Virus record (IMG/VR): IMGVR_UViG_3300020186_000013
Location: 1 to 64,000 of that record
DNA length: 64,000 nt
Reading direction: 5' to 3' (one strand)
Shown here: positions 11,293 through 29,614 of the stretch, one piece after another
Position numbering within the stretch: the first letter of the stretch is position 1
Layout: every line of letters begins with the position of its first letter
Made by a program: the position numbers and the translations under genes
Notes under the pieces: model-generated
The model's input: the letters and a program-made list of their open reading frames with translations, nothing else
The model's database searches: none
What the model was told of the DNA's origin: nothing

Positions 11293-11308
11293 TAGAAGCC
11301 GGTTTCTA
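11293..11308. promoter_or_regulatory. palindromic site TAGAAGCCGGTTTCTA
   Basis: Variant of recurrent 16-mer; overlaps upstream stop. Confidence 0.6.
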
Positions 11309-13384: not shown

Positions 13385-13395
13385 GGTTATCCTTT

Positions 13396-14001
13396 TCACT
13401 TCTGTGTGGAGGTACAGAACAGGCCCGTCAGCTCAATGAGCTTGTCGAGCTTGCGGTAGAACTCCAGGTACGATCCATGATTCGAGATCATGAAATCACA
13501 GTCTTCCGCCGCGAACTCCACAGTGGGGTCCACGGCCGCTCGGGGGTTGGCAATCCAGATCGAGGCGTCAATGGTGTTGTCCTTGACCGCCCCGTGCAAT
13601 TCCTGCCGACCCCGAAGCCCGACGGCGAAGTCGCCGTCGCCGAGGATCATCCGGGCCAACAGGCTGAGGTCCTTGCCCCGCACCATGTGGCCGACGGTGA
13701 TCCAAAACTCGCGGTTCTGGTGCCGTTCGGCCCAGACCACGCTCTCTTCCCCTTCCGTCGCGTGTGCCACGAACTTGACCAAGTTGTTCGACGAACTGCC
13801 GCCGTACTTGAGACCCGTCGCGGCACAGATGTACTCTGCGGCCGTGTCCTTCCCGGACCGGCCCATACCGAGGATGGCAAACACCGGGATACCGTGTGTG
13901 GCACGCCACGCCTTACGCTGGCGGTAGTTCTCCTCTTTCTGCTCAATGAACGCCCGATGGACCGTCTTGGCCTCATCGACACGCTCTTGCAAACCGACCA
14001 T
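13396..14001 (-). CDS. deoxynucleoside monophosphate kinase-like P-loop protein
   Basis: ILGMGRSGKDTAAEYI, R..W...G, GLR..QE, CDFMISNHGS; start uncertain. Confidence 0.7.
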   Translation of the reverse strand: MVGLQERVDEAKTVHRAFIEQKEENYRQRKAWRATHGIPVFAILGMGRSGKDTAAEYICAATGLKYGGSSSNNLVKFVAHATEGEESVVWAERHQNREFWITVGHMVRGKDLSLLARMILGDGDFAVGLRGRQELHGAVKDNTIDASIWIANPRAAVDPTVEFAAEDCDFMISNHGSYLEFYRKLDKLIELTGLFCTSTQK

Positions 14002-17000: not shown

Positions 17001-17552
17001 GCGGGCCTCGATCATGGCCTCCAACAGGATCTCTCCCGTCGAACCAACCAGGTAGCGGCACTTCTCGCTCTCCTCCTTCCACGGCATCTTGCCAATGACC
17101 ATCACCTTCGCAGGGTGCGGGCCGTCGGTCACCGGTGGCTTTACGTACGGGTCCATCTCAGACTGGATGAACGCCGCCATGTGCTGACCCCAGATGTGTC
17201 CGGGGACAAACGTCACCTCCTTCGGTGGCTGACCAGGGCGGACCTCGACCCGCAACGGGAACAGGGGCTCCCGGAGTGCCCGGCGGTAAAGCGTGTCCAA
17301 CCGCTGGGACGGCCGGTAAATGAGCTTCCCGGTCTTCTTCTCCTTCATGAAGACAGTCTTCAGCTCGGGCGGGTCGTCCTTCTCCTCGTGGTCTGTGAGC
17401 CGCAGGAAGTTCGGCCCCGGCGGGGGCATGCCGGGGGCGTTCCAGTGGTACGCCCCCCGGTTCAACATCATCTTCCGCTGGGTACGGACGACCTTCTTCT
17501 GAAGTTCCGCACCCAGAGTCACGACCCGACGCTTGAGCCGTTCAATTTCCAT
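14079..17552 (-). CDS. polA: family A DNA polymerase with N-terminal uracil-DNA-glycosylase-like domain and 3'-5' exonuclease
   Basis: UDG-like VMVIG...LVG.TG..L...ELRIVKP.YILLLG...VHPA; exo IAIDAE; TGRWKSSRPNLQNI; motif A DLMGAELR, motif B RNIAKTVIFGIAYG, motif C LQIHDAL. Confidence 0.92.
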   Translation of the reverse strand: MEIERLKRRVVTLGAELQKKVVRTQRKMMLNRGAYHWNAPGMPPPGPNFLRLTDHEEKDDPPELKTVFMKEKKTGKLIYRPSQRLDTLYRRALREPLFPLRVEVRPGQPPKEVTFVPGHIWGQHMAAFIQSEMDPYVKPPVTDGPHPAKVMVIGKMPWKEESEKCRYLVGSTGEILLEAMIEARISRQEMAHWYVTSLVKFMPPDDQTTLKSGWIADCMPLLHQELRIVKPDYILLLGADASKALLGSKAGVGYMEGRLVPFEFPVHFDEDSEPIIHQAMCMTVVHPAQVARDPASRRTLERGCGRFAFVLKEAKTGLTETDIDHRKCTSWEEYLAWEEEAAADLANEPPGMNIIAIDAEWEGTHPVNSNSYVRTIQMSWGHKKAICFVLNDTEGKCCFKDKNGKDATARLAKATTKFVNQYRIVGHFFVADLEHLVYHGFDFRKGFFIPTEDAEDGTPFWVRCMQGEGGLDTGMMIHSIEETALLGLESVAMRYTTCPRYDIALEDSVVELCKQLKIKRKALEGYGKIPDDILVPYGNYDADATRRIAVTAMGYLDEDYEFNCVWEPFGGSMLTLPIILEIHQQGIFVDIKRVKKLTRDFSTARASLEQAIVDEFGWPEFNIRSVQHVKEVLFGVEYNGKVTKDGEPIRLRPKGAKCLRVEPLLTTDKPPKKWSDIVAMGRTRDHTPGTGKAVLAILAQENPEVADQINMIRDYRFLDQVLKSLLRTPEEDANQNWITQKDEQGNILLDDEGGEEYEFTEGIAGCIDDDGMVRTHLYPTAETGRWKSSRPNLQNISKTRDPDYERLLVGDDGKTLYKHKLRSIFRSPPPGTLTPQTFWKDGKKVEGWVATTAEDEWELGERDLMGAELRGMAIMSNSTLMIDHTARALTYAEDGYSIDGMRCTHGEAGAPLKKCKTCPYPHPEFHDIHSSVAKMAFKLSCHPSKPGLASIGKVHLRNIAKTVIFGIAYGRQAKAIALAAKEQRKPGEPEVSVDDAQAVIDAVFAMYPELQDFFAEARFRAVNVGWLCNCFGRMRRFPATSDSKLEGEFERQAMNFPIQSMIADFVDRWLSVLHQARERLLPEFGEYIFYWQLQIHDALLIRNKKKYRDYIHNVLIPWSLTQVPIYPTRLNGTPIEGRGPYYLGSDKEICTWWGEKI

Positions 17553-18663
17553 TTGTTGGCACCTTAGCGAACGACACCTCGACGCCCTGGTCTTCCGCCT
17601 CCGCGATCACGTACTCGCGAAGGAAGTCTCGGTCCAGGGAGCCGGGGTCCGTATTGGGGGGCAGCTTGACGACCGCGACGTGCTCCATCCTCGCCTTCAG
17701 CTTCCGGACCAAGTCCTTCGTGGCGACCGTGTCAAACTCCTCGGGGTCGAGGAGCACCACGCCCGCCCGCTTCTTGAACACAGCCACGAAGTCACGTTGC
17801 TGCTGGGACGACAGGGTCTTGCCCAACAGCGGCATGGCCATGGGACCAAACGCGAACACGTCAAACCAGCCCTCGACGAGTACGCCGGTATGGAACTCCC
17901 TGGCGTTGTCGAGGTTCGCCAGGAACGCACTCTTGGGCATATTCGGTTCGGTGAAATACTTCGGCGGGAGGTTACGCTTGTTCGGCCCCTTCCAGTCCAG
18001 CTCCCCGCAGTACCGGGCCTGCCAGCCCACCAACTTGCCCCGGTTACGCATCGGGACAATGATCCTCTTCCGGGCCAGGTAGTGGACGGACTCCTCGCAA
18101 TAACCCACCCCGTAAAACTTCGAGAGGACGACAGGGTCGAGCTTACGGCCCTTGATGTAGCTGTAGGCCGGATGGCCCTTATCCAGCTCATGTAGCGGCG
18201 TCACCACGCCCGGCAGCCTCGCCTTGAGTTTGGACAAGTCGACGACCTTGCCGACCCGGATCGTGGCACGGGCCAGCTTCAGGGTCGGCGAGTACAGCAT
18301 GTCACGTAGGGTCTTGCGGTTGTCCCCTTTCCCCATGCACGACTCGTTGTAGCAAATCGTCATGAAGTCCAAGCTGCGACCGGACTCCTTGTCCTTGGTG
18401 CCGTACCGATGGTTGATGTACAGCCGAAACGTGGTGTCGTTACAGAACGGGCAGCACACCCGGTAATACTCCCCGTCTTGCTTGATCACCATGTAGTCGC
18501 CGCCACGGCTCAGGACCTGACCGTCGCCCTGCACCTGACCGTCGACGGCGGGGGTGTAGCCCGGACGGGAGTACCCGTCAAAGGCTTGGCCCTTGTTGCT
18601 GATCTTAACCCCGCCGAACACCTCCTTCAGCCGGTCGTAAAGGACCTCGTTGAGAGCCGTCAT
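17542..18663 (-). CDS. DNA primase (Zn finger + TOPRIM)
   Basis: CPFCND..C...C, RIIVP...VGWQAR, PKY, LVEGWFD, LLDPE, DPG. Confidence 0.85.
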   Translation of the reverse strand: MTALNEVLYDRLKEVFGGVKISNKGQAFDGYSRPGYTPAVDGQVQGDGQVLSRGGDYMVIKQDGEYYRVCCPFCNDTTFRLYINHRYGTKDKESGRSLDFMTICYNESCMGKGDNRKTLRDMLYSPTLKLARATIRVGKVVDLSKLKARLPGVVTPLHELDKGHPAYSYIKGRKLDPVVLSKFYGVGYCEESVHYLARKRIIVPMRNRGKLVGWQARYCGELDWKGPNKRNLPPKYFTEPNMPKSAFLANLDNAREFHTGVLVEGWFDVFAFGPMAMPLLGKTLSSQQQRDFVAVFKKRAGVVLLDPEEFDTVATKDLVRKLKARMEHVAVVKLPPNTDPGSLDRDFLREYVIAEAEDQGVEVSFAKVPTNGN

Positions 18664-20444
18664 AGGCTCGCCTCCGTGCTCGTGTTGGAGAAGGGCGGTG
18701 CCGCCTTCTCTTTCTTCTTCGGTGCGGTGTTACCCTTCGGCGTGGCGGCAGCACTGTTGTTATCCTCTTCCGGCTCGTTGTCCTTGGCTACGCCGTTGGC
18801 CTCCGCGAGGGTCATGATGGTCGCACCCTGGATGCAGTACAGTTTCGACATGTTCTTAATGCGGTTGAACTCGCCCTCGATCTTGACGATCTTCCGCGAG
18901 TTCGGTGGCTTGCGGCGGTACTTGGTGACATCGAAGACGCAGAACTGATTTCCGTCCTTCGTCGCCGGGCCGGTGACGATGCAGAAGTCCGCGAACATGC
19001 CCACGGTCTTGCACTCGTCGCCGTCGGTGTGATGGAACTGGGCCGAGGGTCCCCGCTCGTTAGCCGACCCGGAGAACTGGTGGACGATCCACACCGGGCA
19101 GCCCAGAGGCACACCGATGAAATCGACGGCCTGCTTCGGGGCACGCTTGAGGATGTGCCGCTTGTTGTCGTCCGTGAACTTGTCGTCCGACCCGACCATG
19201 TTGTCGATCATGGCCGCGAGGTGGTCAATCCACACCACAGTAATCTGGCACTTGTCGAGAGCCGCTTGGGCCTTCAGTCGAGCGGCCAGCTCCAGCATGC
19301 CGCCGCACCCCTTCGGGTTGATCTCCGACCCGACGCTAGTCATGTCCAAGAAGATGCCGTGCTTACGGATCAGCTCGACCGCCGCTTCGACACGCTCCCA
19401 CTCGCCCATCAGCGACGCCGGGTCGACACCCTTCGCGATCTCCGTCGCGTACAACGTCTCCTCGTACTTCTGGAGGGGCAACTCGCCCGTCTTCCGAAGG
19501 TCCTGCATCGTGGCGACGCTGGCGACGCCGAGCATCCGGTCGCGTGAGATGTCGGCCAGGAATGCAAGGCACCGCTGGCGGACCTCGTTCTTCTTGGTCT
19601 CGTACGTGGCGTACACAGCCTTATACAGGACCCGCGTCTCACTGCCCGCCGCCTCGTACGCCGCGTTCTCGGTCACCGTCCGGTCGTGAGCGGCCTTGAC
19701 GCTGACACAGAACGCCTGGACGGCCAGGGTCGTCTTACAGGACGAGAACGGGCCGAAGAACAGGTAACACTCACCTGCCGTCTGCCCGCCAATGAACTCG
19801 TCGAGCACGCTGACGCCAGTGGACTCCAACTTGGGCTGCGTCTCGTGCTGCCAGCCGTCGTCGAACAGGGCGTCGGTCAGGGCGTTAGAGTCCTCAGCAG
19901 CCGACGCGATGGAAGCGACCTTGTCCTGGAGCACCTGCATCAGGTTGTTCGAGACGGTGCCATCGCGAATCAGAAGTGACAGATCCCCGGCCACCAACTC
20001 GTCCTTGAACTGGCGGACGACCTTGGTCGCCTCCTTGGCGTGCATCGTCGACGTGGTGACGTCATAGTCCTGCCAGGTGGCGGGCTCGAAGATGTAGCCC
20101 TTGATGAACTCCTCGCACTCGTCGATCTCGTCCTCGGTCAGGAGGGTCGGGTAGGCGATGAGTTCGTTGTTGACGTCGGTCAGGAGAATCTGTGCGTCGG
20201 GCAGCTGCTGCGTCTGCTTGTAACACTTACGGACGCACCGCCAGATGACGGCGTAGAACTCACCCATCTTCGCGACGTCGGCGTCCTTGAGCACCTTGTG
20301 AGCGAACTCGAACACCGTCGGGTTGCGGACGGCAACCGCGAACATGAGCTGCTTCTTGAGGAGCGACAGCATGCCCCGCCGGCCAATTTTGGCCAAGGGC
20401 TCGCCGTCCTCCGACAAGATCTTGGAGGTCTTATGCTTCGCCAT
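18660..20444 (-). CDS. DnaB-like replicative helicase
   Basis: TGVSVLDEFIGG, Walker A GPFSSCKTT, TYET, Walker B VWIDHL, IVHQ, TKYR; next to primase. Confidence 0.8.
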   Translation of the reverse strand: MAKHKTSKILSEDGEPLAKIGRRGMLSLLKKQLMFAVAVRNPTVFEFAHKVLKDADVAKMGEFYAVIWRCVRKCYKQTQQLPDAQILLTDVNNELIAYPTLLTEDEIDECEEFIKGYIFEPATWQDYDVTTSTMHAKEATKVVRQFKDELVAGDLSLLIRDGTVSNNLMQVLQDKVASIASAAEDSNALTDALFDDGWQHETQPKLESTGVSVLDEFIGGQTAGECYLFFGPFSSCKTTLAVQAFCVSVKAAHDRTVTENAAYEAAGSETRVLYKAVYATYETKKNEVRQRCLAFLADISRDRMLGVASVATMQDLRKTGELPLQKYEETLYATEIAKGVDPASLMGEWERVEAAVELIRKHGIFLDMTSVGSEINPKGCGGMLELAARLKAQAALDKCQITVVWIDHLAAMIDNMVGSDDKFTDDNKRHILKRAPKQAVDFIGVPLGCPVWIVHQFSGSANERGPSAQFHHTDGDECKTVGMFADFCIVTGPATKDGNQFCVFDVTKYRRKPPNSRKIVKIEGEFNRIKNMSKLYCIQGATIMTLAEANGVAKDNEPEEDNNSAAATPKGNTAPKKKEKAAPPFSNTSTEASL

Positions 20445-20463
20445 TCTGTTTCACGCTCCTAGT

Positions 20464-21300
20464 TTACGTTCCTTTACCGAACGTCTCCGTGTAAAGACCG
20501 CGAGCATTGGCCACGAAGTCATCAGGCAAGAGACGACGCCAGTGCTTGAGGTATTGGGTTCTCTTTGACCAGAACTGAATGACCGCCCCTCGTTCGTGCA
20601 GGTTGGCAATCCTGTCGAATTCCGAGTTCTGTTCACTCAGCTCACGAGCAAGGCAATAACGAAACAGTGCGGACAGTTCCAGCTGCGGGTTAAGGAGGAC
20701 CAGGTACTGCGAGTTAAGCATCGTTTGCTTACCGCAGAGGTGCAGGAAGTTGATCTCCCGCATCGCCGTACTGGCTTGGTTCAGCAACGCATTCTTAACC
20801 AACACCCCGTTGGCGTCCGACAGCTCACACTCCCGGTAATAGTTCAGCCACGTTTTCGACAACAGCTGGTTAGGCTCCGGCGGGCAGTGGTCACCAAAGG
20901 CAGTCTTGGCGTGGTTGTCCGACGCATAGCCGAACACGCAGTGCGTGTACTCGACTGGGTCGATCTCCAGGGCTATGAACTTTCTCGCCAACTTCGGCCA
21001 CAAGGGGGCGGCGTTCTTCCCCTCCACGACAACGCCTTCAACCTCCACGGCACCGCCGCCCCGGTCGTAAAGCTGCGGCACCGTGTATCGGGTCAGTGTA
21101 CCGTTCAAGTATGTGTCGAAGGCACTCCGAGCATCAACATACGCTTCCCGCAGACGCAGGCCAATAGCCTCCTCTGCGGCGGTGACCTCCGCAACCGGCG
21201 GGGCCTTCTTCCTCTTGCGTGGCGACGGCTGATCGTCCGTGACGAGCCGACTCCGGGAATGGTCATTTTGCATGGTATTAACCCCACAACATTTTTTCAC
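20464..21300 (-). CDS. hypothetical protein between helicases
   Basis: 278-aa ORF in replication operon. Confidence 0.65.
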   Translation of the reverse strand: MKKCCGVNTMQNDHSRSRLVTDDQPSPRKRKKAPPVAEVTAAEEAIGLRLREAYVDARSAFDTYLNGTLTRYTVPQLYDRGGGAVEVEGVVVEGKNAAPLWPKLARKFIALEIDPVEYTHCVFGYASDNHAKTAFGDHCPPEPNQLLSKTWLNYYRECELSDANGVLVKNALLNQASTAMREINFLHLCGKQTMLNSQYLVLLNPQLELSALFRYCLARELSEQNSEFDRIANLHERGAVIQFWSKRTQYLKHWRRLLPDDFVANARGLYTETFGKGT

Positions 21301-22813
21301 GGAGCGATCCGGGCAACGGAGTATCGAGAGTCTTGATCTTCCACCGCAGAGCCTTGTAACTCTCCTTCCGACCGTCGGACTTCATATTCATCCCACGATT
21401 GAACTTGTCGACGTAGTCGTGAATGATCGCGAACTCCTTGTCCTCGTGCGTACGGCTGGTCCGACCAGGGACCTGGCTGTCGGCGATCCGGCTACCGCCT
21501 GCGTCGCCCCGCACCAACACACTCAGCCGCTTCGAGCTGAACCCGACGCCGAGCACGTCCGTCGAGATGAAGATCGGTATCTCGGCATCCCTGGCCTGCC
21601 GCGTCAGCATCACCCGTCTATCCACTGTCATCTCAGGCAGGTCGTCGATCGGCAGATTCCACCCGCGTAACTTGTTCACGAATGCCGGCGGCAGCTCCCG
21701 CTCCGAGTAGATCAGCGGCGGGTTGACGCCCTTCTTCTGGAACCGGATGAGCAACCGCAGGGCGTGTTCGAGCGTCTTGACATACACCATGACCGGGTCG
21801 TCTGGGTACGACGTCGCGTCCTTGACGATCAGGTCGTTTCGGTAGTCGTTGGACCAGACGCCGTGCCGCAGTTTGTCGGTGCCGATGCGGTCTCCGCAAG
21901 GGTCGACGTCCAGGATCACCTTGCGGAACCGGACCTCGATCGGAGCAACGCCACCGGCGGCGACAGCCTCCTGGTAGTGAACCTTCATCCGCACCGGCCC
22001 AAACATCCCCTCAACCCGCATGTCCTTCCCATCCATCCGCATGTCCATGGTCGCCGACAGGCCGTACATGCGGGGCTGACCGGGGATGAGGCCCATCTGG
22101 GTCGCGTAGTAGTCGGACCCGGCTTCGTGGCACTCGTCGAAGACGATGATGTCGTACGGGTCGTCGGCGACGAGGTGGGGGAGGCAGCCGGCACTGAAGC
22201 ACATGACCCGCTTACCACGGTCACGCTTGCCCGAGCAGACGAGGCCGACGGACGGGAGGTTGAGTCGCAACTCCGGGTAGATCTGGTCCCGGAGAATGGC
22301 GAGCCGCTTGCTCACAATCGCGATGCGGGCCGTCGGGAGCAGCTTGCAGATGCACCGAAGCAGGAAGCTCTTGCCCCACCCCGTCGGGCAATCGAACCGC
22401 CCGTTGTCGTACGTGACCAGCTTGGCCAGAAACTCGTCCTGGCGTTCCTTGAGCACCACGCCACTGTCGAACAGGTGGTCCCACAGCGGCTCGAACACCT
22501 TGGGGTTCTTGTGAGGCGTCAGGTTCTTCTCACGGACGGTGTAGCCCGCCTTCTTGAGCAGGACCGTCAAGCGGTCGGAGAACCCGTACGACGTGGCGAT
22601 CCGCCCCTTGTGGTCGTCCACGAAGCACTCCCATAGATTCTCCTCGAACGGGAGACGACCATTACGCTTCGCGTCGTACAGGTCCTTACCGTACAGGAAC
22701 TCCTTCTCCAAGAACGTCAGGGCCGGCTCGACGATTTGTCGGATGGCCGGCGTGGTCGGCTCAACCACGATCCGGTTCTGGGACCGGAGTAGCATTACTT
22801 CCGGCATTTTCAT
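21278..22813 (-). CDS. superfamily 2 helicase (UvsW/Hef-like)
   Basis: PTGWGKS, DECH, SAT, STDVLGVGF, QVPGRTSR. Confidence 0.9.
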   Translation of the reverse strand: MKMPEVMLLRSQNRIVVEPTTPAIRQIVEPALTFLEKEFLYGKDLYDAKRNGRLPFEENLWECFVDDHKGRIATSYGFSDRLTVLLKKAGYTVREKNLTPHKNPKVFEPLWDHLFDSGVVLKERQDEFLAKLVTYDNGRFDCPTGWGKSFLLRCICKLLPTARIAIVSKRLAILRDQIYPELRLNLPSVGLVCSGKRDRGKRVMCFSAGCLPHLVADDPYDIIVFDECHEAGSDYYATQMGLIPGQPRMYGLSATMDMRMDGKDMRVEGMFGPVRMKVHYQEAVAAGGVAPIEVRFRKVILDVDPCGDRIGTDKLRHGVWSNDYRNDLIVKDATSYPDDPVMVYVKTLEHALRLLIRFQKKGVNPPLIYSERELPPAFVNKLRGWNLPIDDLPEMTVDRRVMLTRQARDAEIPIFISTDVLGVGFSSKRLSVLVRGDAGGSRIADSQVPGRTSRTHEDKEFAIIHDYVDKFNRGMNMKSDGRKESYKALRWKIKTLDTPLPGSLREKMLWG

Positions 22814-22866
22814 CCTTTCAGTTGTGCGGAGCGTTGAAACGGCGTGAGACGACAGCTAGAATTGGC

Positions 22867-23487
22867 TCAGGCAAGCTCGTCTGTTTCACACGAGAATGAG
22901 CCGTCGAGTTGGCAACTCGGCGGCTCGTTCTGTTTCTCCGGACCGCCGGATTCCATGTCTTGTTCGTGCTGCCTCCGTCGCGGACGCAACCCCTCTACCC
23001 CGAAGAAACCGTACTCCCCTGGCTTCCAAGGCGACAAGCCTCGGTACTGCCCAGAGAGTGCCATCAGACGCCAAAAGTCGTCGTCCGTTATTGTACTGGG
23101 GACGACGCAATTCAGCCCCACCACCTGACCGGCCAGAAACGCCTCATGTACGACGTACCGACGCTTCCCGTTGGACGCCCAGTAATACCGCCTATACCAG
23201 CCGTCGCCCTGCGGCAGGCCATCCACGTTGATGTCCCAAAGGATTTTGCCGACCTCGTCCTGATGCTTGCCCAGGAGCTGAGCGGCGAACCGCATATTGG
23301 CATGGTGCCAGCTCGCCAGGAACGTGACAGTCCCCGACGGGCTACGCGGCAGGGTGAAGGAGGCATCCTTCGCCCGACTCTTCACGCTACCCAGGCAATG
23401 CTTGGTGAAACTGATCCGGACCGTGAGTTCTCGCATGGCATCCTGCCCCAGTGTGTCCAATCTACCCGGACATGTCGCACGGCTCAA
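22867..23487 (-). CDS. RAMP (Cas7/Csm3-like) fold candidate
   Basis: N-terminal strand VRISFTKHCLG, FLASW..ANMR, E.F.AG..V.L, C-terminal Gly-rich loop GQYRGLSPWKPGEYGFF. Confidence 0.5.
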   Translation of the reverse strand: MSRATCPGRLDTLGQDAMRELTVRISFTKHCLGSVKSRAKDASFTLPRSPSGTVTFLASWHHANMRFAAQLLGKHQDEVGKILWDINVDGLPQGDGWYRRYYWASNGKRRYVVHEAFLAGQVVGLNCVVPSTITDDDFWRLMALSGQYRGLSPWKPGEYGFFGVEGLRPRRRQHEQDMESGGPEKQNEPPSCQLDGSFSCETDELA

Positions 23488-24470
23488 ACTGCGTTGTCGA
23501 GCGTCCGGAGGTGTACCGAGTAAGCGTCAACCTCTTCCGCACTCTTGAAGAACGACGACGGCAAGAAACCGCCCTCGGGGCGTGGGGCAGCGACTTCGCC
23601 GGACCACACCTCGTACAAGAACCGAACATACCGTCGCGTAGCTGCCATGGTCCCCTTGTGTGCCCCGCCAGCTGCCGCGTGTGCCCGCCACAGGAAGTGC
23701 TGCGGCCGAGTCCTATCCGTAACGCCGGTCCGCCCCAGCCACGACCGCATCAGCACCGTCAACCAATCGAAGTTCCGATCCCTGTCGTTGAAGTTCGTCA
23801 TCCAAGCGTGCATATTCTTGGGCGTCAGTCCCAGGTGCACATACAGCCGGCTCAGCCGGTGGGGCCGGGTCGGGTGCCGGAACCACCTCGGGTCGACGAT
23901 GCGGGCGGCAAGGAGGCACGCCGCGTCGTGGTCGCCCGACGGAATGAACGACACCGCCGGCCACAGCGGGTGGTAGCGGAAGATCCGCCGCACCTGCTCG
24001 TCGACCTCACCCTTGTTGTCTTTCAACGCCGCGATGATGGCGTACGTCGTGTAGTCCTTGTCACTCAGGTCGTGCCAGCACCCCGATGGCAGGACGGCGT
24101 ACTGCTGCCACAGGTGTGACAGCACGCGGGCCGGGCTGCCCCGGTCCTCGGCCGTGGGGCACACCATGGGGCTGCCCAGGACAACCCGCTGCCCGCGAGA
24201 CAGCGACTTGTTACGCACCCGCATATGGTGCAGGTACACGATCAACTCTGCGTTCGACGGCACCCCGAGGAGTCGGATCAGTCGAACCGACCCCAAGTTC
24301 ACGCCCAGCCACTTCAGCTTGTCGAAAAAGACGGCGACGGTACAGCGGGAGTTCTCCCCCACCGCACCGTCGTGCCCGTACCAGACGTGGCCCTGGTCGT
24401 CCGTGTGCAACCGCAGCAAGTCCACGACCGACGCGACGTCTTCTTCAAGCGGGACAAGGGGCATGGTCAC
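23484..24470 (-). CDS. Nop/IS110 C-terminal-domain protein (Tas-like)
   Basis: HPLWPAVSFIP.GD..AACLLAARIVDPRWF...SRLYVHLGLTP and H.G..AA.RR.VRFLYEVW; no DEDD RuvC recognised. Confidence 0.55.
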   Translation of the reverse strand: MTMPLVPLEEDVASVVDLLRLHTDDQGHVWYGHDGAVGENSRCTVAVFFDKLKWLGVNLGSVRLIRLLGVPSNAELIVYLHHMRVRNKSLSRGQRVVLGSPMVCPTAEDRGSPARVLSHLWQQYAVLPSGCWHDLSDKDYTTYAIIAALKDNKGEVDEQVRRIFRYHPLWPAVSFIPSGDHDAACLLAARIVDPRWFRHPTRPHRLSRLYVHLGLTPKNMHAWMTNFNDRDRNFDWLTVLMRSWLGRTGVTDRTRPQHFLWRAHAAAGGAHKGTMAATRRYVRFLYEVWSGEVAAPRPEGGFLPSSFFKSAEEVDAYSVHLRTLDNAV

Positions 24471-26599
24471 GCCTTCAGTTGGATCACCCGGTCGAACGCG
24501 GCCTTCAGCCCCTCGGCGTGGGTGATCACAATGAGTTGCTGCTTGCCCTTCACCTTCTTCGAGAAGTAGGTGATTGCCTGGGCAAGGAACTTGATGTTCT
24601 CGTCGTCCAAGTTGGCCGTCGGTTCGTCAAGCACGAGCATACCAAGACCCGACCGGTAGAGCGAGTTCACTGTGATCCAGAAGGCCACCGAAAGCACGCC
24701 CTTCTGCCCGCCCGACAGGGCCTCGGCCCGGTGCGGCGGGTCGCCCGGCTTGTGCACCAGGAAACTCAGTTCGGTGTCGGTCTCAACCCAGAACGGTGCC
24801 CCGAACAACTCCAACCCCTTGTTGACGTCCCCCTCCATCCGAGTCAGGTTGGCCTGGGCCACGGCCTGGGGCAGGGCCTGTTTGTGGAAGATGTCGCGGG
24901 TCAGTTGCAGGACCTTGGTCATCTCCTTCAGCTTGCGGCTCCGCTTCATGCGGGCCTTGGCCTGCTCGTACTGCGTCTTCTTGGCGGCGATCTGCGTGTT
25001 GATGCCGACCAGCTGGCCCTCCAGGTTGGCGATCTCCAGCTCGGCCGTGCGATGCTCCTTCAAGCGGATTTTGGCCTTCACCAACACCTCGTCGAGTACC
25101 TGGTTCTCGGACGCCGTCGTCAACAACTCGCGGATGTGACTGTCAACCGCAGCGAGCTGGGCCTCCTTCCGCGTCACCAACTTGGTCAGCCCCTCCCACT
25201 GCTTCTTCGCCCCCTCGGTCACCTCGGCGTTCTTCTCGTAGACCCGGATCGTCTCGGCCAGCTCCTCCTTGTCGCCGTCCGGGTACTGGAGGTCCTTGAT
25301 CGCCGCAAGGGCCTCCTCGTTCTCCTTGACCGCTGCGTCGTTGGTCGCCTTCCACTCGTTGTACTTGGCAAGGCTGGACTCGTACTCCTTCCAATGGGAG
25401 ATCAAAGATTGCAACTCGCTGATCTGGCCGGGGCGGTCGTTGTTGATGCCCCGTAGGTGCTTCAAGTGCGACTCAATCGCCGCGATCTCGGTGCTGCACG
25501 TCGGGCAATACATCATGCCCTTCTGGGAGAACAACGCGAGCGTCTTCTTGGCCTCCATCAGCTCCTGCGAGTACGCCGCCAGCTTCTGCTCGGCGTTGAC
25601 CGGCGGGGCCTTGGGCTTGAACGGCGGCTCCTTCTTCACCGTCAACAGCTTCTTACGTTCGAGCAACTTCTGCTTGCGGGCCTGCTGCTTCTCGCACTGC
25701 TCGAACGCCGCCAAGGCCGAGCGGGCCATGGTGGCGGGCTGGGCCATCGCGTCCGTCGCCTTCTTCAACCCCTCGTACGCCTTCTCCTGCTTCTTCGCGT
25801 TGGTGGTGACGCCACGCAACTCCTCACCTAGCGTGTCCGACTCCAGCTTAAGCGGCCCGAGGCGGGTCAGAGCCGCCGCCTGGCGTTCCGCCCGACGCAG
25901 GATCTCCTCGGCGTTCTCCTTGCGGGTCGGTTCGAGCTGCTTCTCCTTCTCCAAGGTGATCCGCAGGTTGATGTCGTCCCTCTGGTCCTTCAGCTCGCCG
26001 ATCTCGTGCGTCAACTCGTCCGTGTTGTCGACGGCCTGGTCGATGGCCTCGCGGTCCTTGGCGATCACCGACGCGAGCACGTCCTGCACCGTCTCGCAGT
26101 GCTCGGTGCCGTTCAAGGCCATGTACGCCTTGGCCCGGATGGCCGGCGTCGTGTGCAGGAAGTCGTCGAGGGCACCATCGACGGTCCCCGGCTGTCGCTT
26201 GAACACGGCGAAGTCAAGGATCTTCTTGTCGATGCCCAGACGCCGCAGCCGCTCCGTGCCTTCCTTGTCCGACGTGATGAGCTTCTCGTCGTTGACCTTC
26301 AGCTCGTACTTCGCCGGCCGCAGGGACCGTTTGATCGCGATGGTAGCGTCGTCGTGAACGATGGTCACCCGGATCGCCGACTCGTCGTCCTTGGTCGAGC
26401 GGTTGTTGATGACGTCCGTCCGGACGCCGTCGAACCGGCTAAAGTCGTTCGTGATGGCCGCGTAGATGGCGTCCACCAGGGTCGACTTGCCGGCCCCGTT
26501 GTCGGCCAAGATCACGTTGGCCCCGCGATCGAACTCGAAATCGTGCCGCCCGTAGAACGGCCCGATGTTCGTCAACGCCGCCTTTGTGATGTACATCAC
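24467..26599 (-). CDS. Rad50/SbcC-like SMC ATPase
   Basis: DNGAGKST, coiled coil with CPTC zinc hook, LSGGQ, LVLDEPT, ITH. Confidence 0.92.
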   Translation of the reverse strand: MMYITKAALTNIGPFYGRHDFEFDRGANVILADNGAGKSTLVDAIYAAITNDFSRFDGVRTDVINNRSTKDDESAIRVTIVHDDATIAIKRSLRPAKYELKVNDEKLITSDKEGTERLRRLGIDKKILDFAVFKRQPGTVDGALDDFLHTTPAIRAKAYMALNGTEHCETVQDVLASVIAKDREAIDQAVDNTDELTHEIGELKDQRDDINLRITLEKEKQLEPTRKENAEEILRRAERQAAALTRLGPLKLESDTLGEELRGVTTNAKKQEKAYEGLKKATDAMAQPATMARSALAAFEQCEKQQARKQKLLERKKLLTVKKEPPFKPKAPPVNAEQKLAAYSQELMEAKKTLALFSQKGMMYCPTCSTEIAAIESHLKHLRGINNDRPGQISELQSLISHWKEYESSLAKYNEWKATNDAAVKENEEALAAIKDLQYPDGDKEELAETIRVYEKNAEVTEGAKKQWEGLTKLVTRKEAQLAAVDSHIRELLTTASENQVLDEVLVKAKIRLKEHRTAELEIANLEGQLVGINTQIAAKKTQYEQAKARMKRSRKLKEMTKVLQLTRDIFHKQALPQAVAQANLTRMEGDVNKGLELFGAPFWVETDTELSFLVHKPGDPPHRAEALSGGQKGVLSVAFWITVNSLYRSGLGMLVLDEPTANLDDENIKFLAQAITYFSKKVKGKQQLIVITHAEGLKAAFDRVIQLKA

Positions 26600-27780
26600 C
26601 CCTCCAGTTGTTTAACACGCCAAGCCTCGATCTCGCGACGGACCTCTTCGGCACTCGTCTTGTTGATTAGAAGCTCGACCAGTTCTGTCACCTCGACCGT
26701 CAACCCCGACATGCCGTTGTCGACCAGGAACTGCTCGACGTACGGCCGGAACGTGTTCTCCAGGGACGCCACGCGGCCCTTGACGTCGACGACCGTGCTC
26801 TTGCCGTCGACCTTCTCCGGGCGTACCTCGCTCGGGAACAGGTGCACCCGGTCGCCGACCGCCTTCTGGATGCGTCGCCACGCCCCAGTCACCGACGCCG
26901 AGTACGCTACCCGCATGAGCGGCCGGAGCATGTCCTCCGGCAGGTTCGCGTTGGCACCCCGAGCGTACGCCTCGTCGATGAACCGCTCGATCTCTTCCAG
27001 GAACTCGGTCATGTCCTCCTCGGATAAGACCGACGCCGTGAGCATCTGCCGGGTGACCAGCGGGATACGGCGGAACGACCCGTCACTGCGGAAGGCGACG
27101 AAGAACTTGTCCTGGGGCTCGATGATGCTCTGGACCGACATCGACCCCGGATTGGTCACCAGGATCTTCTGCCCGTCCTTGCCGATCAACGTCTTGACGA
27201 TGGACTCGCCGTGGTAATCGCCGGTTGCCACGCGAACGATCGGCAGCGGGATGTCTGCGGCCGACATCTGGGGCGACGCGATGCTCCCCATGAAGTCCCC
27301 CCAGCACTGGTGCAGGAACAGCCCAGTCGCCTCACCGGGGATCTCGTTGGTCAGCCAGTCCTGGATTTCCGCCGCCGGGGCGTAGTCGTGGCCGGCCCAC
27401 ACAAAGTCGCCGATGGTGACGACCTTCTTGTGGACGTGCTGCACCATCGCGTCGTTGTCGAACAGCCACGGCAGCACGCCAGGACCGGCGTGGTCGTGGT
27501 TGCCCTGGATGAACAGGAAGTTGACGCCCCCGCCCGCCAGCTCCTTGAGCTTCATGCGGAGGGGGGTGACCGCCATGCTCAGGTTGCGGGCACGGTCCAG
27601 GGAGTCGCCGAGGTCGACGACCGTCTGGACAGTGGGGCTGTTGGTCGCGTAGTCGATGACCTGCTGCAATGCGTGCAGCGAGTCGTCAATGCCGCGACTC
27701 GGGTAGCCGCCCCCGCAGTGGAGGTCGGCGTAGAGCACGGCGATGTCTTTCGGCTCGGTGGTAGCCTTCGTCTTTGCCAT
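26596..27780 (-). CDS. Mre11/SbcD-like metallophosphoesterase nuclease
   Basis: ADLH, GDSLD, GNHD, LHQ, GDYH, NPGS. Confidence 0.9.
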   Translation of the reverse strand: MAKTKATTEPKDIAVLYADLHCGGGYPSRGIDDSLHALQQVIDYATNSPTVQTVVDLGDSLDRARNLSMAVTPLRMKLKELAGGGVNFLFIQGNHDHAGPGVLPWLFDNDAMVQHVHKKVVTIGDFVWAGHDYAPAAEIQDWLTNEIPGEATGLFLHQCWGDFMGSIASPQMSAADIPLPIVRVATGDYHGESIVKTLIGKDGQKILVTNPGSMSVQSIIEPQDKFFVAFRSDGSFRRIPLVTRQMLTASVLSEEDMTEFLEEIERFIDEAYARGANANLPEDMLRPLMRVAYSASVTGAWRRIQKAVGDRVHLFPSEVRPEKVDGKSTVVDVKGRVASLENTFRPYVEQFLVDNGMSGLTVEVTELVELLINKTSAEEVRREIEAWRVKQLEG

Positions 27781-27785
27781 GAATC

Positions 27786-27801
27786 TAGAATCCAGTTATT
27801 A
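27786..27801. promoter_or_regulatory. degenerate palindromic site TAGAATCCAGTTATTA
   Basis: Gene junction; variant of recurrent 16-mer. Confidence 0.45.
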
Positions 27802-28332
27802 GGTCCTGATCTTCTTCACGATCTCTGTCGTACTCATGCCGTCGAGCATCGGGGCGAACAGCACGCACCCGCCGTTCTTGATGACGAAGTCCTCGCCGAC
27901 GATGTCCTCGTCGTCGTAGTAGCCGCCGCCCTTGATGAGCAGGTCGGGCCTAATCGTCTCGATCAGCTGGAGAGGCGTCGACTCCTCGAAGCCCGTCACC
28001 CAGTCCACGCCCTTGACCTGCCGCACAGCCTCGGCCCGCTGCTTGAACGCGACGATCGGTCGGCCCTCGCCCTTGAGCTGCCTCACCGAGTGGTCGGAGT
28101 TCAACGCGACCACGAGCATCATCTTCTCGGGGTCGAGCCACGTCCGCGTCTTGGCGTACCGCAGCACGGCGAGGTGCCCGGCGTGAAGTAGGTCGAAGCA
28201 CCCGTTGACGACGACGACGAAACCATCCATCGCCTTCCATTCCTTCACCCGGTTCTTGAGCGGCCCGTCCTGGTGCCACATGCAGACATTCTCGTCCCTC
28301 AGCATCTCACAGTAACGACTACCCGTGGTCAT
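27799..28332 (-). CDS. rfaE2: D-glycero-beta-D-manno-heptose 1-phosphate adenylyltransferase (HldE domain II)
   Basis: NGCFDLLHAGH, VVALNSD.SVRQLKGEGRP, RPDLLIKGG, STTEIV. Confidence 0.85.
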   Translation of the reverse strand: MTTGSRYCEMLRDENVCMWHQDGPLKNRVKEWKAMDGFVVVVNGCFDLLHAGHLAVLRYAKTRTWLDPEKMMLVVALNSDHSVRQLKGEGRPIVAFKQRAEAVRQVKGVDWVTGFEESTPLQLIETIRPDLLIKGGGYYDDEDIVGEDFVIKNGGCVLFAPMLDGMSTTEIVKKIRT

Positions 28333-29369
28333 CTCTTCTCCTGGTAAGCCTTCCCGAGATCTTCCGTCGTGAGTTTGTAAACCCCCTGATAGGCCACCGC
28401 CAGCGACGCAGCCAAGTTAGCCCGCTTCACGGCACCGTCAATATCATCGCGGTCCGACTCGGACGCCCCCACGAACCAGTCCGCCATCGCCGCCAGGAAC
28501 GTGTCCCCGGCCCCCGTCGTGTCGAGAAGGACTCGGGGGGTCGTCGGCGGCATTCGGGTCAGTAACCCGGTGTCCGTTCCGAAGATGGCACCGTACTGCC
28601 CGAGCGTGATGATCACGTACTCGAACGAAATGTCCGCGTCCTTGGCCATCTTCCGGTATAGGGTGTCAAACAACTGGAAGTGGGACTCCTCGATGTCGAC
28701 CGGCCTATACCGCCGCAACTCTTTGGCCAGCTTGGTGCCCTCCAAGCCACTGAATGCGATCGCCTCATCCAGGTTGCACTTGAAGATCGCCCGGTTGTGA
28801 CTGTACTTATGCCACCCCCGAGGGTCTCGCGGCGGGTCGATCAAGACGGTCAGGTGGTAGAGGCGGGCAAACGACAGCACGGCCCGAACGAACCGTTCCG
28901 ATAGGAAGCCCTTGTTGTAGTCCGAGAACACGATCACAGGTCGACAGCTCTCGACGGCGACGGTCACCTGCGTTAATGCCTCGTCGAACCAGTTGTCGGC
29001 CGGGCTGACGAGCATCTCGCGATCCAGCCGCATGAGTTGCCCGGACCTGGTGACAAATCGGTGCTTTACCGTCGTGACGTGCTCCGGCCAGGCGGCCAGC
29101 CAAGCGTCGATCTTGTTATCCGCACACAACTGCTGCACGATCTTCCCGTGCGTATCGTCGCCAACGAGTCCGAACAGCATCACCCGCCGGTCGAGACCCG
29201 CCAAGTTCGCCGCGACGTTGGCCGCACCGCCCAGGTTGTACGTCGTGCCCTCGTCCTTGAGGACGAGGACGTGATCATGCTCGGGCGACACCCCGCTCAC
29301 CGTGCCGCTAGTCGTAACGTCGAGCATCACGTCACCGATGACGATGACGTGCGGCTTCTCAGAACCCAT
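28329..29369 (-). CDS. rfaE1: heptose-7-phosphate kinase (HldE domain I, PfkB family)
   Basis: VIGDVMLD, LGGAANVAANL, TTVKHR, SDYNKG, DTTGAGDTF. Confidence 0.85.
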   Translation of the reverse strand: MGSEKPHVIVIGDVMLDVTTSGTVSGVSPEHDHVLVLKDEGTTYNLGGAANVAANLAGLDRRVMLFGLVGDDTHGKIVQQLCADNKIDAWLAAWPEHVTTVKHRFVTRSGQLMRLDREMLVSPADNWFDEALTQVTVAVESCRPVIVFSDYNKGFLSERFVRAVLSFARLYHLTVLIDPPRDPRGWHKYSHNRAIFKCNLDEAIAFSGLEGTKLAKELRRYRPVDIEESHFQLFDTLYRKMAKDADISFEYVIITLGQYGAIFGTDTGLLTRMPPTTPRVLLDTTGAGDTFLAAMADWFVGASESDRDDIDGAVKRANLAASLAVAYQGVYKLTTEDLGKAYQEKR

Positions 29370-29380
29370 GCTTACTCCTG

Positions 29381-29614
29381 CTATGTTGAGTCGTTGAAGT
29401 ATCTTCGGATGGCGTTGCGGACGTCGGACATCCTGGCCACCCGCGTCGCGGAGGCGTCCTCGCCCCGCTTACAGCGGTCGCACCGGCGTATCCTCTCCCG
29501 GTCGGGGGAGAGGAACTCTCGGCCGCACTTCATACAGTTACGCTTTCCCGGAACAGAAGCGTGGGGCATCTTGCCCGCACTGCCTTGACCGGGGTCGGGT
29601 CCTTCCGTGACCAT
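29381..29614 (-). CDS. small zinc-ribbon protein
   Basis: RNCMKCGREF.S....RRCDRC. Confidence 0.55.
   Translation of the reverse strand: MVTEGPDPGQGSAGKMPHASVPGKRNCMKCGREFLSPDRERIRRCDRCKRGEDASATRVARMSDVRNAIRRYFNDST

What the first reader, a model, noticed from the sequence alone, without database searches (positions are those of the whole stretch)
22867..23487. Solo Cas7/Csm3-like RAMP candidate without CRISPR
Seen: the motif order matches RAMPs: first strand 'VRISFTKHCLG', 'TFLASW..NMR' helix, 'HEAFLAGQ' strand and 'L..SGQYRGLSPW..GEYGFF.V' G-loop. Inference: a minimal viral RAMP, possibly filament-forming on RNA, or a Cas7-mimic anti-CRISPR.
Basis: inference. Interest (0 to 1): 0.65.

Follow-up and report, generated by a model that had tools for sequence, protein, structure and literature searches.

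The report
Guide-less Vipr-like RAMP in phage replisome
A small protein in an uncultivated 208-kb phage is predicted to fold like the Cas7/Vipr RNA-binding proteins of CRISPR and VIPR systems, yet it sits among DNA-replication genes and no guide-RNA repeats were found in the genome, so it may show what such proteins do without guides.

Summary
The ORF is real, but it starts at Met18. The gene is 22867..23436 (-) and encodes 189 aa.

The protein belongs to a conserved, unannotated viral family: at least 168 homologs and 156 clusters at 50% identity. No Pfam, PHROG, NCBIfam or PADLOC model hits it.

The closest sequence relative is the newly described phage Vipr protein of VIPR systems (hhalign Prob 95%, E 3e-8), over the helix-2/G-loop/last-strand region only.

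It differs from VIPR in four ways:
- No YNNGG repeat RNA, and no array of period 4, 5 or 7, in this genome or in five near-complete relatives. Positive controls worked.
- Intergenic flanks are only about 50 nt.
- The GG-reading residues are not conserved.
- The helical-bundle insert is absent.

The gene has a fixed place in the replication/recombination module: SbcCD, a TasR/IS110-like RuvC-fold protein, the RAMP, an SF2 helicase, a DnaB-like helicase, primase and PolA. It is better conserved than its neighbours, yet it was gained or lost at least 8 times.

Best reading (inferred): a single-stranded nucleic-acid-binding RAMP that needs no guide array and assists recombination or replication. 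I class it as a new variant of a known kind.

The parts
22867..23436 (-). Gene for the Vipr-like solo RAMP (189 aa, P0002), stop codon included. The true start is the ATG at 23436.
   Evidence: Homologs all start at MRELTV. AGGA lies 4 nt before the ATG, and the upstream gene's stop is at 23484-23486. AlphaFold2 pLDDT is 86.9. Top structural matches are Cas7-type RAMPs. hhalign to Vipr gives Prob 95%.
22972..23436 (-). Basic RAMP core, residues 1-155. Order of elements: beta1, short insert, helix-1, beta2, beta-hairpin (thumb position), beta3, helix-2, G-loop, beta4.
   Evidence: Secondary structure of the model: E2-10, H41-55, E66-72, E80-86, E92-100, E105-112, H118-131, E145-152. Across the family the core has median charge +8 and pI 9.85.
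23008..23052 (-). Glycine-rich loop, residues 129-143 (GQYRGLSPWKPGEYG). It holds the invariant residues G129, Y131, G133, S135, P136, P139 and G143.
   Evidence: Alignment A1. This is the segment that aligns to the Vipr G-loop AGxxxGxGDWRPRFGRF.
22870..22971 (-). Disordered, acidic, poorly conserved C-terminal tail, residues 156-189.
   Evidence: pLDDT is below 50 over residues 157-167 and 179-181. The tail is net negative in 156 of 208 family members, with a median length of 20 aa.
22898..22926 (-). Stem-loop of 12 pairs in two six-pair runs separated by a one-base bulge, within the tail-coding region near the 3' end of the gene. It encodes the PPSCQLDG peptide seen in P0002 and P0003, with a close variant (PPSCELGG) in P0019.
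   Evidence: Fold of 22815-22940 (-): -42.9 kcal/mol, z = -2.74. A hairpin with compensatory changes follows the stop codon in a related subclade. That hairpin occurs once per genome.
23437..23483 (-). 47-nt spacer between the upstream gene and the RAMP gene, containing the ribosome-binding site.
   Evidence: The spacer is too short for a vrRNA. In relatives this gap is often 2 nt, or the genes overlap by 4 nt.
23484..24470 (-). Upstream neighbour (328 aa): RuvC/RNase-H-like N-terminal domain plus a helical C-terminal domain, the architecture of TIGR-TasR and IS110 bridge recombinases. The canonical DEDD acidic residues are not evident.
21278..22813 (-). Downstream neighbour: SF2 DNA helicase (511 aa).
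   Evidence: phrog_16 DNA helicase E 9e-36. Weak matches to ResIII and Helicase_C. It directly follows the RAMP in all 34 distinct RAMP-anchored relatives.
24467..27780 (-). SbcC-like (24467..26599) and SbcD-like (26596..27780) nuclease pair.
   Evidence: SMC_N E 2e-20, phrog_77 E 3e-40, Metallophos E 2.5e-5.
14079..21300 (-). Rest of the conserved replisome block: unknown 278-aa protein (20464..21300), DnaB-like helicase (18660..20444), primase (17542..18663), and family-A DNA polymerase with an N-terminal UDG domain (14079..17552).
   Evidence: Gene order is conserved in the related loci.

Best explanation
The gene encodes a minimal single-RRM RAMP of the Vipr/Cas7 kind. It appears fixed as a component of the recombination/replication module in a clade of uncultivated jumbo phages, and it seems to work without an array of guide RNAs.

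Shown:
- The predicted fold.
- The distant relationship to Vipr.
- The basic core with an acidic disordered tail.
- The fixed gene position, and frequent translational coupling to the RuvC/TasR-like neighbour.
- Conservation stronger than the neighbouring genes.
- The absence of repeat RNAs.

Inferred:
- It binds single-stranded nucleic acid (RNA or ssDNA) through helix-1, the G-loop and the thumb hairpin, as Cas7 and Vipr do, and probably coats it as an oligomer.
- Binding is without the GGY specificity of Vipr.
- It acts on R-loop, D-loop or resected-end intermediates together with SbcCD, the RuvC-fold protein and the SF2 helicase.
- It is helpful but replaceable, because it has been lost or displaced several times.
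For: Fold:
- AlphaFold2 pLDDT 86.9.
- All of the Foldseek PDB top 50 are Cas7-type RAMPs, E down to 1e-5.
- The nearest annotated ESM Atlas neighbour is a PF03787 cluster, TM 0.60.

Kinship to Vipr:
- PDB sequence hit to SUSP1 Vipr.
- hhalign Prob 94.5-95.2%, E 8e-8 to 3e-8.
- A collinear full-length alignment starting at Met1, sharing the T-x-P-x-L motif after beta1.

No guide array:
- No run of 4 or more YNNGG units in 208 kb. NNNGG runs are at chance level and there is no period-5 GG signal.
- No array of period 4, 5 or 7 with any conserved motif. TRF finds essentially only repeats with periods that are multiples of 3.
- None in 34 related loci or in five genomes that are 90-100% complete.
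- The same scan finds the arrays in SUSP1 and in a related jumbo phage.

Module membership:
- Identical gene order in all RAMP-anchored relatives. The RAMP is 33-65% identical, against 24-44% for SbcC, the helicase and the DnaB-like protein, and 34-52% for PolA.
- Gaps to the upstream gene of 2 nt, or overlaps of 4 nt, in many loci.

Physical chemistry:
- Core median charge +8, pI 9.85. Tail acidic in 156 of 208 members.

Missing functions in the genome:
- No recognisable SSB, gp32, gp2.5-type protein or RecA/UvsX.

Displacement:
- An unrelated ORF occupies the RAMP slot in L069.
Against: - Nucleic-acid binding is not shown, and the oligomer prediction gave no answer.
- The gene is not universal. 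Only 47 of 80 helicase-anchored loci have it, and at least 8 gains or losses are needed on the helicase tree.
- A 100% complete 226-kb relative lacks it entirely. It therefore cannot be an indispensable SSB.
- The G-loop keeps its own invariant residues (Y131, S135, P136). That could mean a specific ligand rather than backbone-only binding.
- A guide RNA with no tandem periodicity, or one supplied by another element, cannot be excluded.
- An OB-fold SSB too divergent for Pfam may exist elsewhere in the genome.
Confidence: 0.38

Rival explanations
1. It is the effector of a true but non-canonical VIPR system. It would load a guide RNA that lacks the YNNGG pentamer periodicity, or one encoded elsewhere (another element or the host), and silence or mark target DNA. 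The adjacent helicase and RuvC-fold protein would act as vap-like accessory enzymes.
For: - Homology to Vipr.
- Published VIPR types III-V are described as having nuclease or helicase accessory genes, and some types use degenerate repeats such as NNNGG, YNNNG or NNNNG (bioRxiv 10.64898/2026.04.26.720920).
- Patchy presence with repeated loss resembles an accessory conflict gene. SUSP1 relatives likewise lost vipr-vap1 (10.64898/2026.10.15.759431).
- Orphan vrRNAs and vipr genes can be separated between elements.
- The neighbour has the fold of the RNA-guided TasR/IS110 proteins.
Against: - No array of period 4, 5 or 7 of any motif in six near-complete genomes.
- Flanking spacers are about 50 nt, with no room for an RNA gene.
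- The Vipr residues that read the GG bases (H17, D177) are not conserved, and the helical bundle with K33 that holds the target strand is absent.
- The helicase and the RuvC-fold gene persist in RAMP-minus genomes, so they are not dedicated accessory genes.
- The protein evolves more slowly than the polymerase.
Confidence: 0.25
2. It is a decoy. As a Cas7/Vipr mimic it would soak up crRNAs or vrRNAs of the host or of rival phages, or poison their Cas7/Vipr filaments (anti-CRISPR or anti-VIPR).
For: - A solo RAMP with no guides of its own.
- Repeated loss on the helicase tree.
- Some relatives lacking it carry a canonical VIPR locus, so VIPR conflict exists in this phage group.
- From my own knowledge, phage-encoded Cas homologues acting as anti-CRISPRs have been reported. 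This was not checked here.
Against: - A fixed position inside the replisome operon, and conservation higher than the neighbours, are unlike fast-evolving anti-defence genes.
- The GG-reading residues of Vipr are absent, so binding of GGY repeats is not expected.
- No anti-CRISPR-associated regulator lies nearby.
Confidence: 0.12
3. It is a Cas6-like hairpin-binding RNA endonuclease or autoregulator. It would recognise the stem-loop at the 3' end of its own gene and process or stabilise the operon transcript.
For: - A hairpin with 9 compensatory pairs directly follows the stop codon in a subclade.
- A stem-loop of 12 pairs lies at the 3' end of the gene in the window.
- H97 and Y131 are invariant and K19 is nearly invariant. 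From my own knowledge these recall the Cas6 Tyr-His-Lys triad.
Against: - The hairpin is single-copy, preceded by an A-run, and looks like an ordinary terminator or 3' stabiliser.
- The placement of H97, Y131 and K19 in one site was not tested.
Confidence: 0.1

Closest known systems
Vipr protein of VIPR systems (Escherichia phage SUSP1 type II; bioRxiv 10.64898/2026.04.26.720920 and 10.64898/2026.04.26.720927; PDB 36pp)
   Same: - Phage-encoded, about 20 kDa, single-RRM RAMP with no CRISPR array.
- Collinear alignment from Met1, sharing T-x-P-x-L after beta1.
- Matching helix-2, G-loop and beta4: AG-x3-G-x3-W-+-P...G-x-F-x-V, hhalign Prob 95%.
- A beta-hairpin with conserved arginines in the thumb position.
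   Different: - No YNNGG vrRNA arrays and no long intergenic flanks.
- H17 and D177, which read the GG bases, are replaced. The family has an invariant Ser-Pro where Vipr has Gly-Asp.
- The ~30-aa helical bundle carrying K33 is absent.
- It is embedded in the replisome module rather than a two-gene vipr-vap cassette.
- Cross-family HMM scores are only 13-27 bits.
- A canonical Vipr in a related phage is a separate gene at another locus.
Cas7-family backbone subunits (type VII Cas7, Csm3 of type III-A, Cmr4 of type III-B, Cas7 domains of gRAMP/Cas7-11)
   Different: - Sequence identity is 8-15%, and no Pfam RAMP profile hit occurs in 99 members.
- No crRNA, CRISPR array, Cas5, Cas10 or Cas11 partners.
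- The catalytic Asp of Csm3/Cmr4 could not be mapped.
Phage single-stranded DNA-binding proteins (T4 gp32, T7 gp2.5, bacterial SSB)
   Same: - A basic nucleic-acid-binding core followed by a disordered acidic C-terminal tail.
- Location in the replication/recombination module.
- The genome has no recognisable member of those SSB families.
   Different: - A different fold: RRM/RAMP, not OB.
- Not universally present in the clade.
- ssDNA binding is untested.

Membership tests
RAMP superfamily (fold level) | RRM/ferredoxin-like beta-alpha-beta-beta-alpha-beta core | tested here: met
RAMP superfamily (fold level) | Glycine-rich loop between helix-2 and the last strand | tested here: met
   G129, G133 and G143 are invariant, lying between H118-131 and E145-152. 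G133 and G143 remain invariant, and G129 nearly so, across 99 diverse members.
RAMP superfamily (fold level) | Thumb beta-hairpin inserted between beta2 and beta3 | tested here: inconclusive
   A hairpin (E80-86, E92-100) with conserved R83 and R93 sits in the right place. No residue-level superposition on a solved thumb could be made.
RAMP superfamily (Pfam PF03787 and other Cas RAMP profiles) | Match to a curated sequence profile | tested here: not met
   No RAMP or Cas family at E <= 1 for the protein or for any of 99 members. PF03787 finds nothing in the genome. NCBIfam and PADLOC are negative.
CRISPR Cas7/Csm3 | Encoded with a CRISPR array and other cas genes (Cas5, Cas10 or Cas8, Cas11) | tested here: not met
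   No CRISPR-like array in 208 kb. The neighbours are replication and recombination genes.
CRISPR Cas7/Csm3 | Catalytic Asp in the loop after beta1 (target RNA cleavage) | not tested
   No invariant Asp in residues 11-40 of alignment A1. Structural equivalence could not be checked with these tools.
VIPR system | Vipr protein: solo single-RRM RAMP homologous to SUSP1 Vipr | tested here: inconclusive
   hhalign Prob 94.5-95.2%, E about 3e-8, but confidently aligned over only 40-41 columns. Reciprocal HMM hits score 13-27 bits. The protein is a relative, but it is not shown to fall inside the described Vipr clade.
VIPR system | vrRNA: 9-16 tandem YNNGG (or related pentamer) units with a 3' tail, in intergenic flanks of vipr | tested here: not met
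   Zero runs of 4 or more units in the genome, no period-5 signal, and no array of period 4, 5 or 7. None in the related loci or in five complete relatives. Positive controls were found in SUSP1 and in L122. Flanks are 47 and 53 nt.
VIPR system | Residues that read the GGY motif (SUSP1 H17, R138, D177, W178, R179) and the bundle residue K33 | tested here: not met
   H17 aligns to a variable position. D177 aligns to the invariant P136. The bundle segment containing K33 falls in an alignment gap. W178 aligns to W137, which is variable in the family. R179 aligns to K138.
VIPR system | Dedicated accessory gene (vap) co-inherited with vipr | tested here: inconclusive
   The RuvC-fold gene and the helicase flank the RAMP, but they persist in genomes without it: unk328 in 61 and the RAMP in 47 of 80 loci.
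OB-fold SSB, gp32 and gp2.5 families | OB fold or family profile | tested here: not met
   The fold is RRM/RAMP. PF00436, PF08804 and PF10991 are absent from the genome.

The most novel reading that the evidence does not exclude
This family may show RAMPs working without a guide array. In that reading a Vipr/Cas7-like filament protein coats ssDNA or RNA in phage recombination-dependent replication, paired with a TasR/IS110-like RuvC-fold protein. It would be either the ancestral, pre-guide job of RAMPs or a secondary domestication of VIPR into the replisome. A bolder variant is that the RAMP and the TasR-like neighbour form a new two-protein RNA-guided module whose guide is not a tandem repeat.
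Probability: 0.25. Interest if true: 0.85.

Novelty: new variant of a known kind. Interest (0 to 1): 0.66.

Why it matters
VIPR was proposed in 2026 preprints as the viral ancestor of CRISPR RAMP effectors. Every described type uses pentamer-repeat guide RNAs.

This family is abundant in metagenomes, highly conserved and related to Vipr. It has no detectable guide array, it has lost the GG-reading residues and the target-strand bundle, and it is wired into a replication/recombination operon.

That bears directly on what RAMPs did before, or apart from, RNA guidance. It also offers a compact (about 155 aa) candidate single-stranded nucleic-acid binder for biochemistry.

The adjacent TasR/IS110-like protein places folds from two families of RNA-guided proteins side by side in a replisome. 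That pairing is unexpected and can be tested.

Tried and rejected
- **Phage records:** megablast and tblastn against 50,697 records found no relatives of the locus or the protein. The polymerase has only distant hits, about 24-30% identity, so there is no cultivated relative.
- **Profile libraries:** Pfam, PHROGs, NCBIfam and PADLOC were negative for the RAMP.
- **PDB by sequence:** the first, narrower profile gave only a chance hit.
- **Homo-oligomer prediction:** three copies of the core gave 'no answer' (score 0.32, mark 0.42). This is not evidence either way.
- **ESM Atlas for the upstream neighbour:** its own model was poor and the hits were meaningless.
- **Repeat RNAs:** the CRISPR-like array scan, YNNGG/NNNGG scans, period-5 GG(Y) scans, the unbiased period 4-7 scan and TRF were all negative.
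- **Rfam on the window:** negative.
- **Hairpin after the gene as a repeated RNA handle:** rejected. The covariance model finds it once per genome.
- **The RAMP as the clade's indispensable SSB:** rejected, because complete relatives lack it.
- **RNA-seq evidence:** only DNA runs of microbial-mat metagenomes hold the locus.
- **Supplementary tables of the VIPR paper:** not held. I could not check whether this family is among its 670 Vipr proteins.

Full report
**1. The observation**

The real gene is shorter. All homologs begin at MRELTV. The ATG at 23436 has an AGGA four bases upstream, and the preceding gene stops at 23484-23486. The gene is therefore 22867..23436 (-), 189 aa (P0002).

The window is the first 64 kb of a 208,145-bp IMG/VR virus record estimated at 93% complete. 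The record was assembled from microbial-mat metagenomes, and only DNA runs hold it.

**2. A real, conserved, unannotated family**

A word-indexed search found at least 168 homologs at 50-85% identity, all 140-200 aa and none with a Pfam domain. Some lie on contigs of up to 235 kb. An exhaustive HMMER scan of 1.8 billion representatives found 156 clusters, all stand-alone proteins.

In 32 sequences, 21 residues are invariant. In 99 diverse members, G133 and G143 stay invariant. F10, L15, G16, R83, H97, E98, G103, P113, G129, S135, P136 and F145 stay nearly invariant.

Pfam, PHROGs, NCBIfam and PADLOC give nothing for the protein. No Pfam RAMP or Cas model hits any of the 99 members.

**3. Fold**

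AlphaFold2 with the family alignment gives pLDDT 86.9 and pTM 0.76. The order of elements is beta1, short insert, helix-1, beta2, beta-hairpin, beta3, helix-2, glycine loop, beta4, followed by a disordered tail.

- All of the Foldseek top 50 against the PDB are Cas7-type RAMPs: type VII Cas7, Csm3, Cmr4, Csf2 and gRAMP, with E down to 1.3e-5 and TM about 0.55.
- In BFVD the best hit is a phage protein annotated as a RAMP.
- In the ESM Atlas, after three viral clusters of the family itself, the next neighbour is a PF03787 cluster at TM 0.60.

**4. Closest family: Vipr**

A broader family profile hit one PDB sequence, 'SUSP1 Vipr protein' (36pp), across helix-2, the G-loop and beta4. This led to three 2026 preprints on VIPR systems.

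- **What VIPR is.** A solo phage RAMP (Vipr, about 20 kDa) polymerises on a vrRNA made of 9-16 YNNGG repeats plus a 3' tail. The vrRNAs are encoded in long intergenic flanks, and there is usually one accessory gene, vap. Seven types are described, and types III-V carry nuclease or helicase accessory genes.
- **Structural detail.** The cryo-EM paper names H17, R138, D177, W178 and R179 as the GGY-reading residues. It names K33, in a helical bundle, as the residue holding the target strand.
- **Control locus.** I fetched the SUSP1 locus (L040) and built a type II Vipr alignment (A3).
- **Profile-profile result.** Comparison with the jumbo-phage family gives Prob 94.5-95.2% and E 8e-8 to 3e-8. 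It is confident over 40-41 columns. With a permissive setting the alignment is collinear from Met1 to the last strand. Both consensus sequences carry T-x-P-x-L at positions 11-15.
- **Profile-sequence result.** Reciprocal HMM hits are marginal, at 13-27 bits.

I read this as distant homology to Vipr. Membership in the described Vipr clade is not demonstrated.

**5. How it differs from VIPR**

(a) Guide arrays.
- A regular-expression scan finds no run of 4 or more YNNGG units on either strand of the 208-kb genome, against 1.75 expected by chance. NNNGG runs are at chance level (24 observed, 23 expected).
- No window has GG in phase in 7 of 10 pentamers.
- An unbiased scan for any array of period 4, 5 or 7 with conserved phases finds none. 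The period-6 hits are coding Asp/Glu repeats.
- TRF reports almost only periods that are multiples of three.
- The 34 RAMP-anchored related loci have none. Five relatives that are 90-100% complete have no five-unit run.
- The same scan finds a 12-unit run upstream and three runs downstream of SUSP1 vipr. It also finds a dense array next to a canonical Vipr in a related jumbo phage. The method therefore works, including on GC-rich DNA.

(b) Flanks. The spacers are 47 and 53 nt here. In relatives they are usually 2-135 nt, and the RAMP gene often overlaps the upstream gene.

(c) Residues. H17 aligns to a variable position. D177 aligns to the invariant P136, so the family has Ser-Pro where Vipr has Gly-Asp. 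The ~30-residue bundle containing K33 is simply missing.

(d) Context: see section 6.

**6. Genomic context**

In every RAMP-anchored relative (34 distinct viral contigs plus metagenome contigs) the gene order is the same:

1. SbcD
2. SbcC
3. 328-aa unknown protein
4. RAMP
5. SF2 helicase
6. 278-aa unknown protein
7. DnaB-like helicase
8. primase
9. PolA-UDG

This order is shown. The RAMP is the best-conserved gene of the block at 33-65% identity. SbcC is 24-43%, the helicase 30-44%, the DnaB-like protein 23-31% and PolA 34-52%.

The core is basic (median net charge +8, pI 9.85). The short C-terminal tail is acidic in 156 of 208 members. That layout recalls single-stranded DNA-binding proteins.

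The genome has no recognisable SSB, gp32, gp2.5-type protein or RecA/UvsX. The only RecA-like signal is in the DnaB-like helicase.

**7. The upstream neighbour**

Folded with 23 orthologs from the related loci, the 328-aa protein gives pLDDT 91.5.

- Foldseek agrees weakly, with IS621 at E 0.011 and TasR at E 0.021.
- The weak HMM hits to NF052498 and to a PHROG transposase family point the same way.
- The usual acidic catalytic residues are not evident. H22, N73, H167 and D193-P-R-W are the conserved positions. Nuclease activity is therefore uncertain.

**8. Not indispensable**

Anchoring on the helicase instead of the RAMP returned 80 loci. Of these, 47 have the RAMP and 61 have the 328-aa gene.

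On a maximum-likelihood helicase tree the RAMP label needs 11 changes, and well-supported branches force at least 8. RAMP-minus rows are nested within RAMP-plus clades.

Nineteen RAMP-minus records were searched whole, and none has the family elsewhere. They include a 100% complete 226-kb genome and a 93% complete one. In L069 an unrelated ORF fills the slot, and in L077 the slot is empty.

The RAMP is therefore a stable, strongly constrained module component that can nevertheless be lost or displaced.

**9. RNA structure at the gene's 3' end**

In one subclade an 11-bp hairpin follows the stop codon, and 9 of its pairs show compensatory changes. A covariance model finds it exactly once per genome. 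It is therefore not a dispersed handle or repeat. It looks like a terminator or a 3' stabiliser.

In the window a stem-loop of 12 pairs lies inside the tail-coding region at 22898..22926 (z = -2.74 for the surrounding 126 nt). This explains why the peptide PPSCQLDG recurs, exactly or as a close variant, in tails that otherwise vary.

**10. Interpretation**

The fold and the kinship rest on computed results, and so does the lack of arrays. Everything about function is inferred.

I judge the most likely function to be guide-array-independent binding of single-stranded nucleic acid, through the same surface Cas7 and Vipr use. The protein would act with SbcCD, the RuvC-fold protein and the SF2 helicase on recombination or replication intermediates (confidence about 0.38).

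The rivals are:
- A non-canonical VIPR whose guide is not a tandem repeat or is supplied in trans (0.25).
- A Cas7/Vipr decoy (0.12).
- A Cas6-like hairpin binder or processor (0.10).

The homo-oligomer prediction gave no answer and is not used as evidence.

**11. Novelty**

Solo phage RAMPs are now known as Vipr proteins, so the class is not new. This family departs from all described VIPR types in four ways: its context, the lack of vrRNA, the loss of the GG-reading residues and the loss of the bundle. I rate it a new variant of a known kind.

I could not check whether the published set of 670 Vipr proteins already includes it, because the supplements are not held.

Noticed in passing
window 23484..24470 (-): The gene upstream of the RAMP is predicted (pLDDT 91.5) to have the RuvC-plus-helical-domain architecture of TIGR-TasR and IS110 bridge recombinases, both RNA-guided families. 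The usual DEDD residues are not evident. It is a conserved member of the replisome block even in phages without the RAMP.
   Followed up: partly
L122 889-2750 (record G014; also G015): A related jumbo phage that lacks the replisome RAMP carries a canonical VIPR locus elsewhere. It has a 249-aa Vipr (hhalign to type II Vipr Prob 97.9%, E 3.6e-13) and a 167-aa neighbouring gene. A roughly 450-nt tract dense in YNNGG units follows them. The region upstream also shows GTCTWGG-like hexamer repeats.
   Followed up: partly
L015-L026 and L035, just after the RAMP stop codon (e.g. L015 6500-6535): A conserved 11-bp hairpin with 9 compensatory pairs, preceded by an A-run. In several loci a second conserved stem beginning GTGTAGCGG follows it. 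It is single-copy per genome.
   Followed up: yes
L069 2624-3136; L077 3079-3408: In close relatives the RAMP slot is filled by an unrelated ORF of about 130-170 aa (L069) or is an empty 330-nt gap (L077).
   Followed up: partly
window 2152..4269 (-): A ThyX (Thy1) thymidylate synthase gene interrupted by an intein-like insert with Hint and LAGLIDADG domains.
   Followed up: no
window 14079..17552 (-): A family-A DNA polymerase of 1157 aa with an N-terminal uracil-DNA-glycosylase-superfamily domain. The fusion is conserved in relatives.
   Followed up: no
window 27799..29593: A cytidylyltransferase-like gene (27799..28332) and a PfkB sugar kinase (28329..29369) sit next to the SbcCD genes, followed by tRNA-Arg(TCT) at 29496..29593 (-). 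This may be a nucleotide-sugar pathway, for example for DNA or surface modification.
   Followed up: no
window 35672 and 49637 (+); five more copies in the genome: A 17-nt near-palindromic motif, TAGAAACTGGCTTYTAG, occurs seven times in the 208-kb genome. It may be a phage promoter or regulatory site.
   Followed up: no
window 11647..11906: A long acidic (Asp/Glu) repeat tract inside the 697-aa ORF 11306..13399 (-). It is the main source of the period-6 and period-9 tandem-repeat signals.
   Followed up: no
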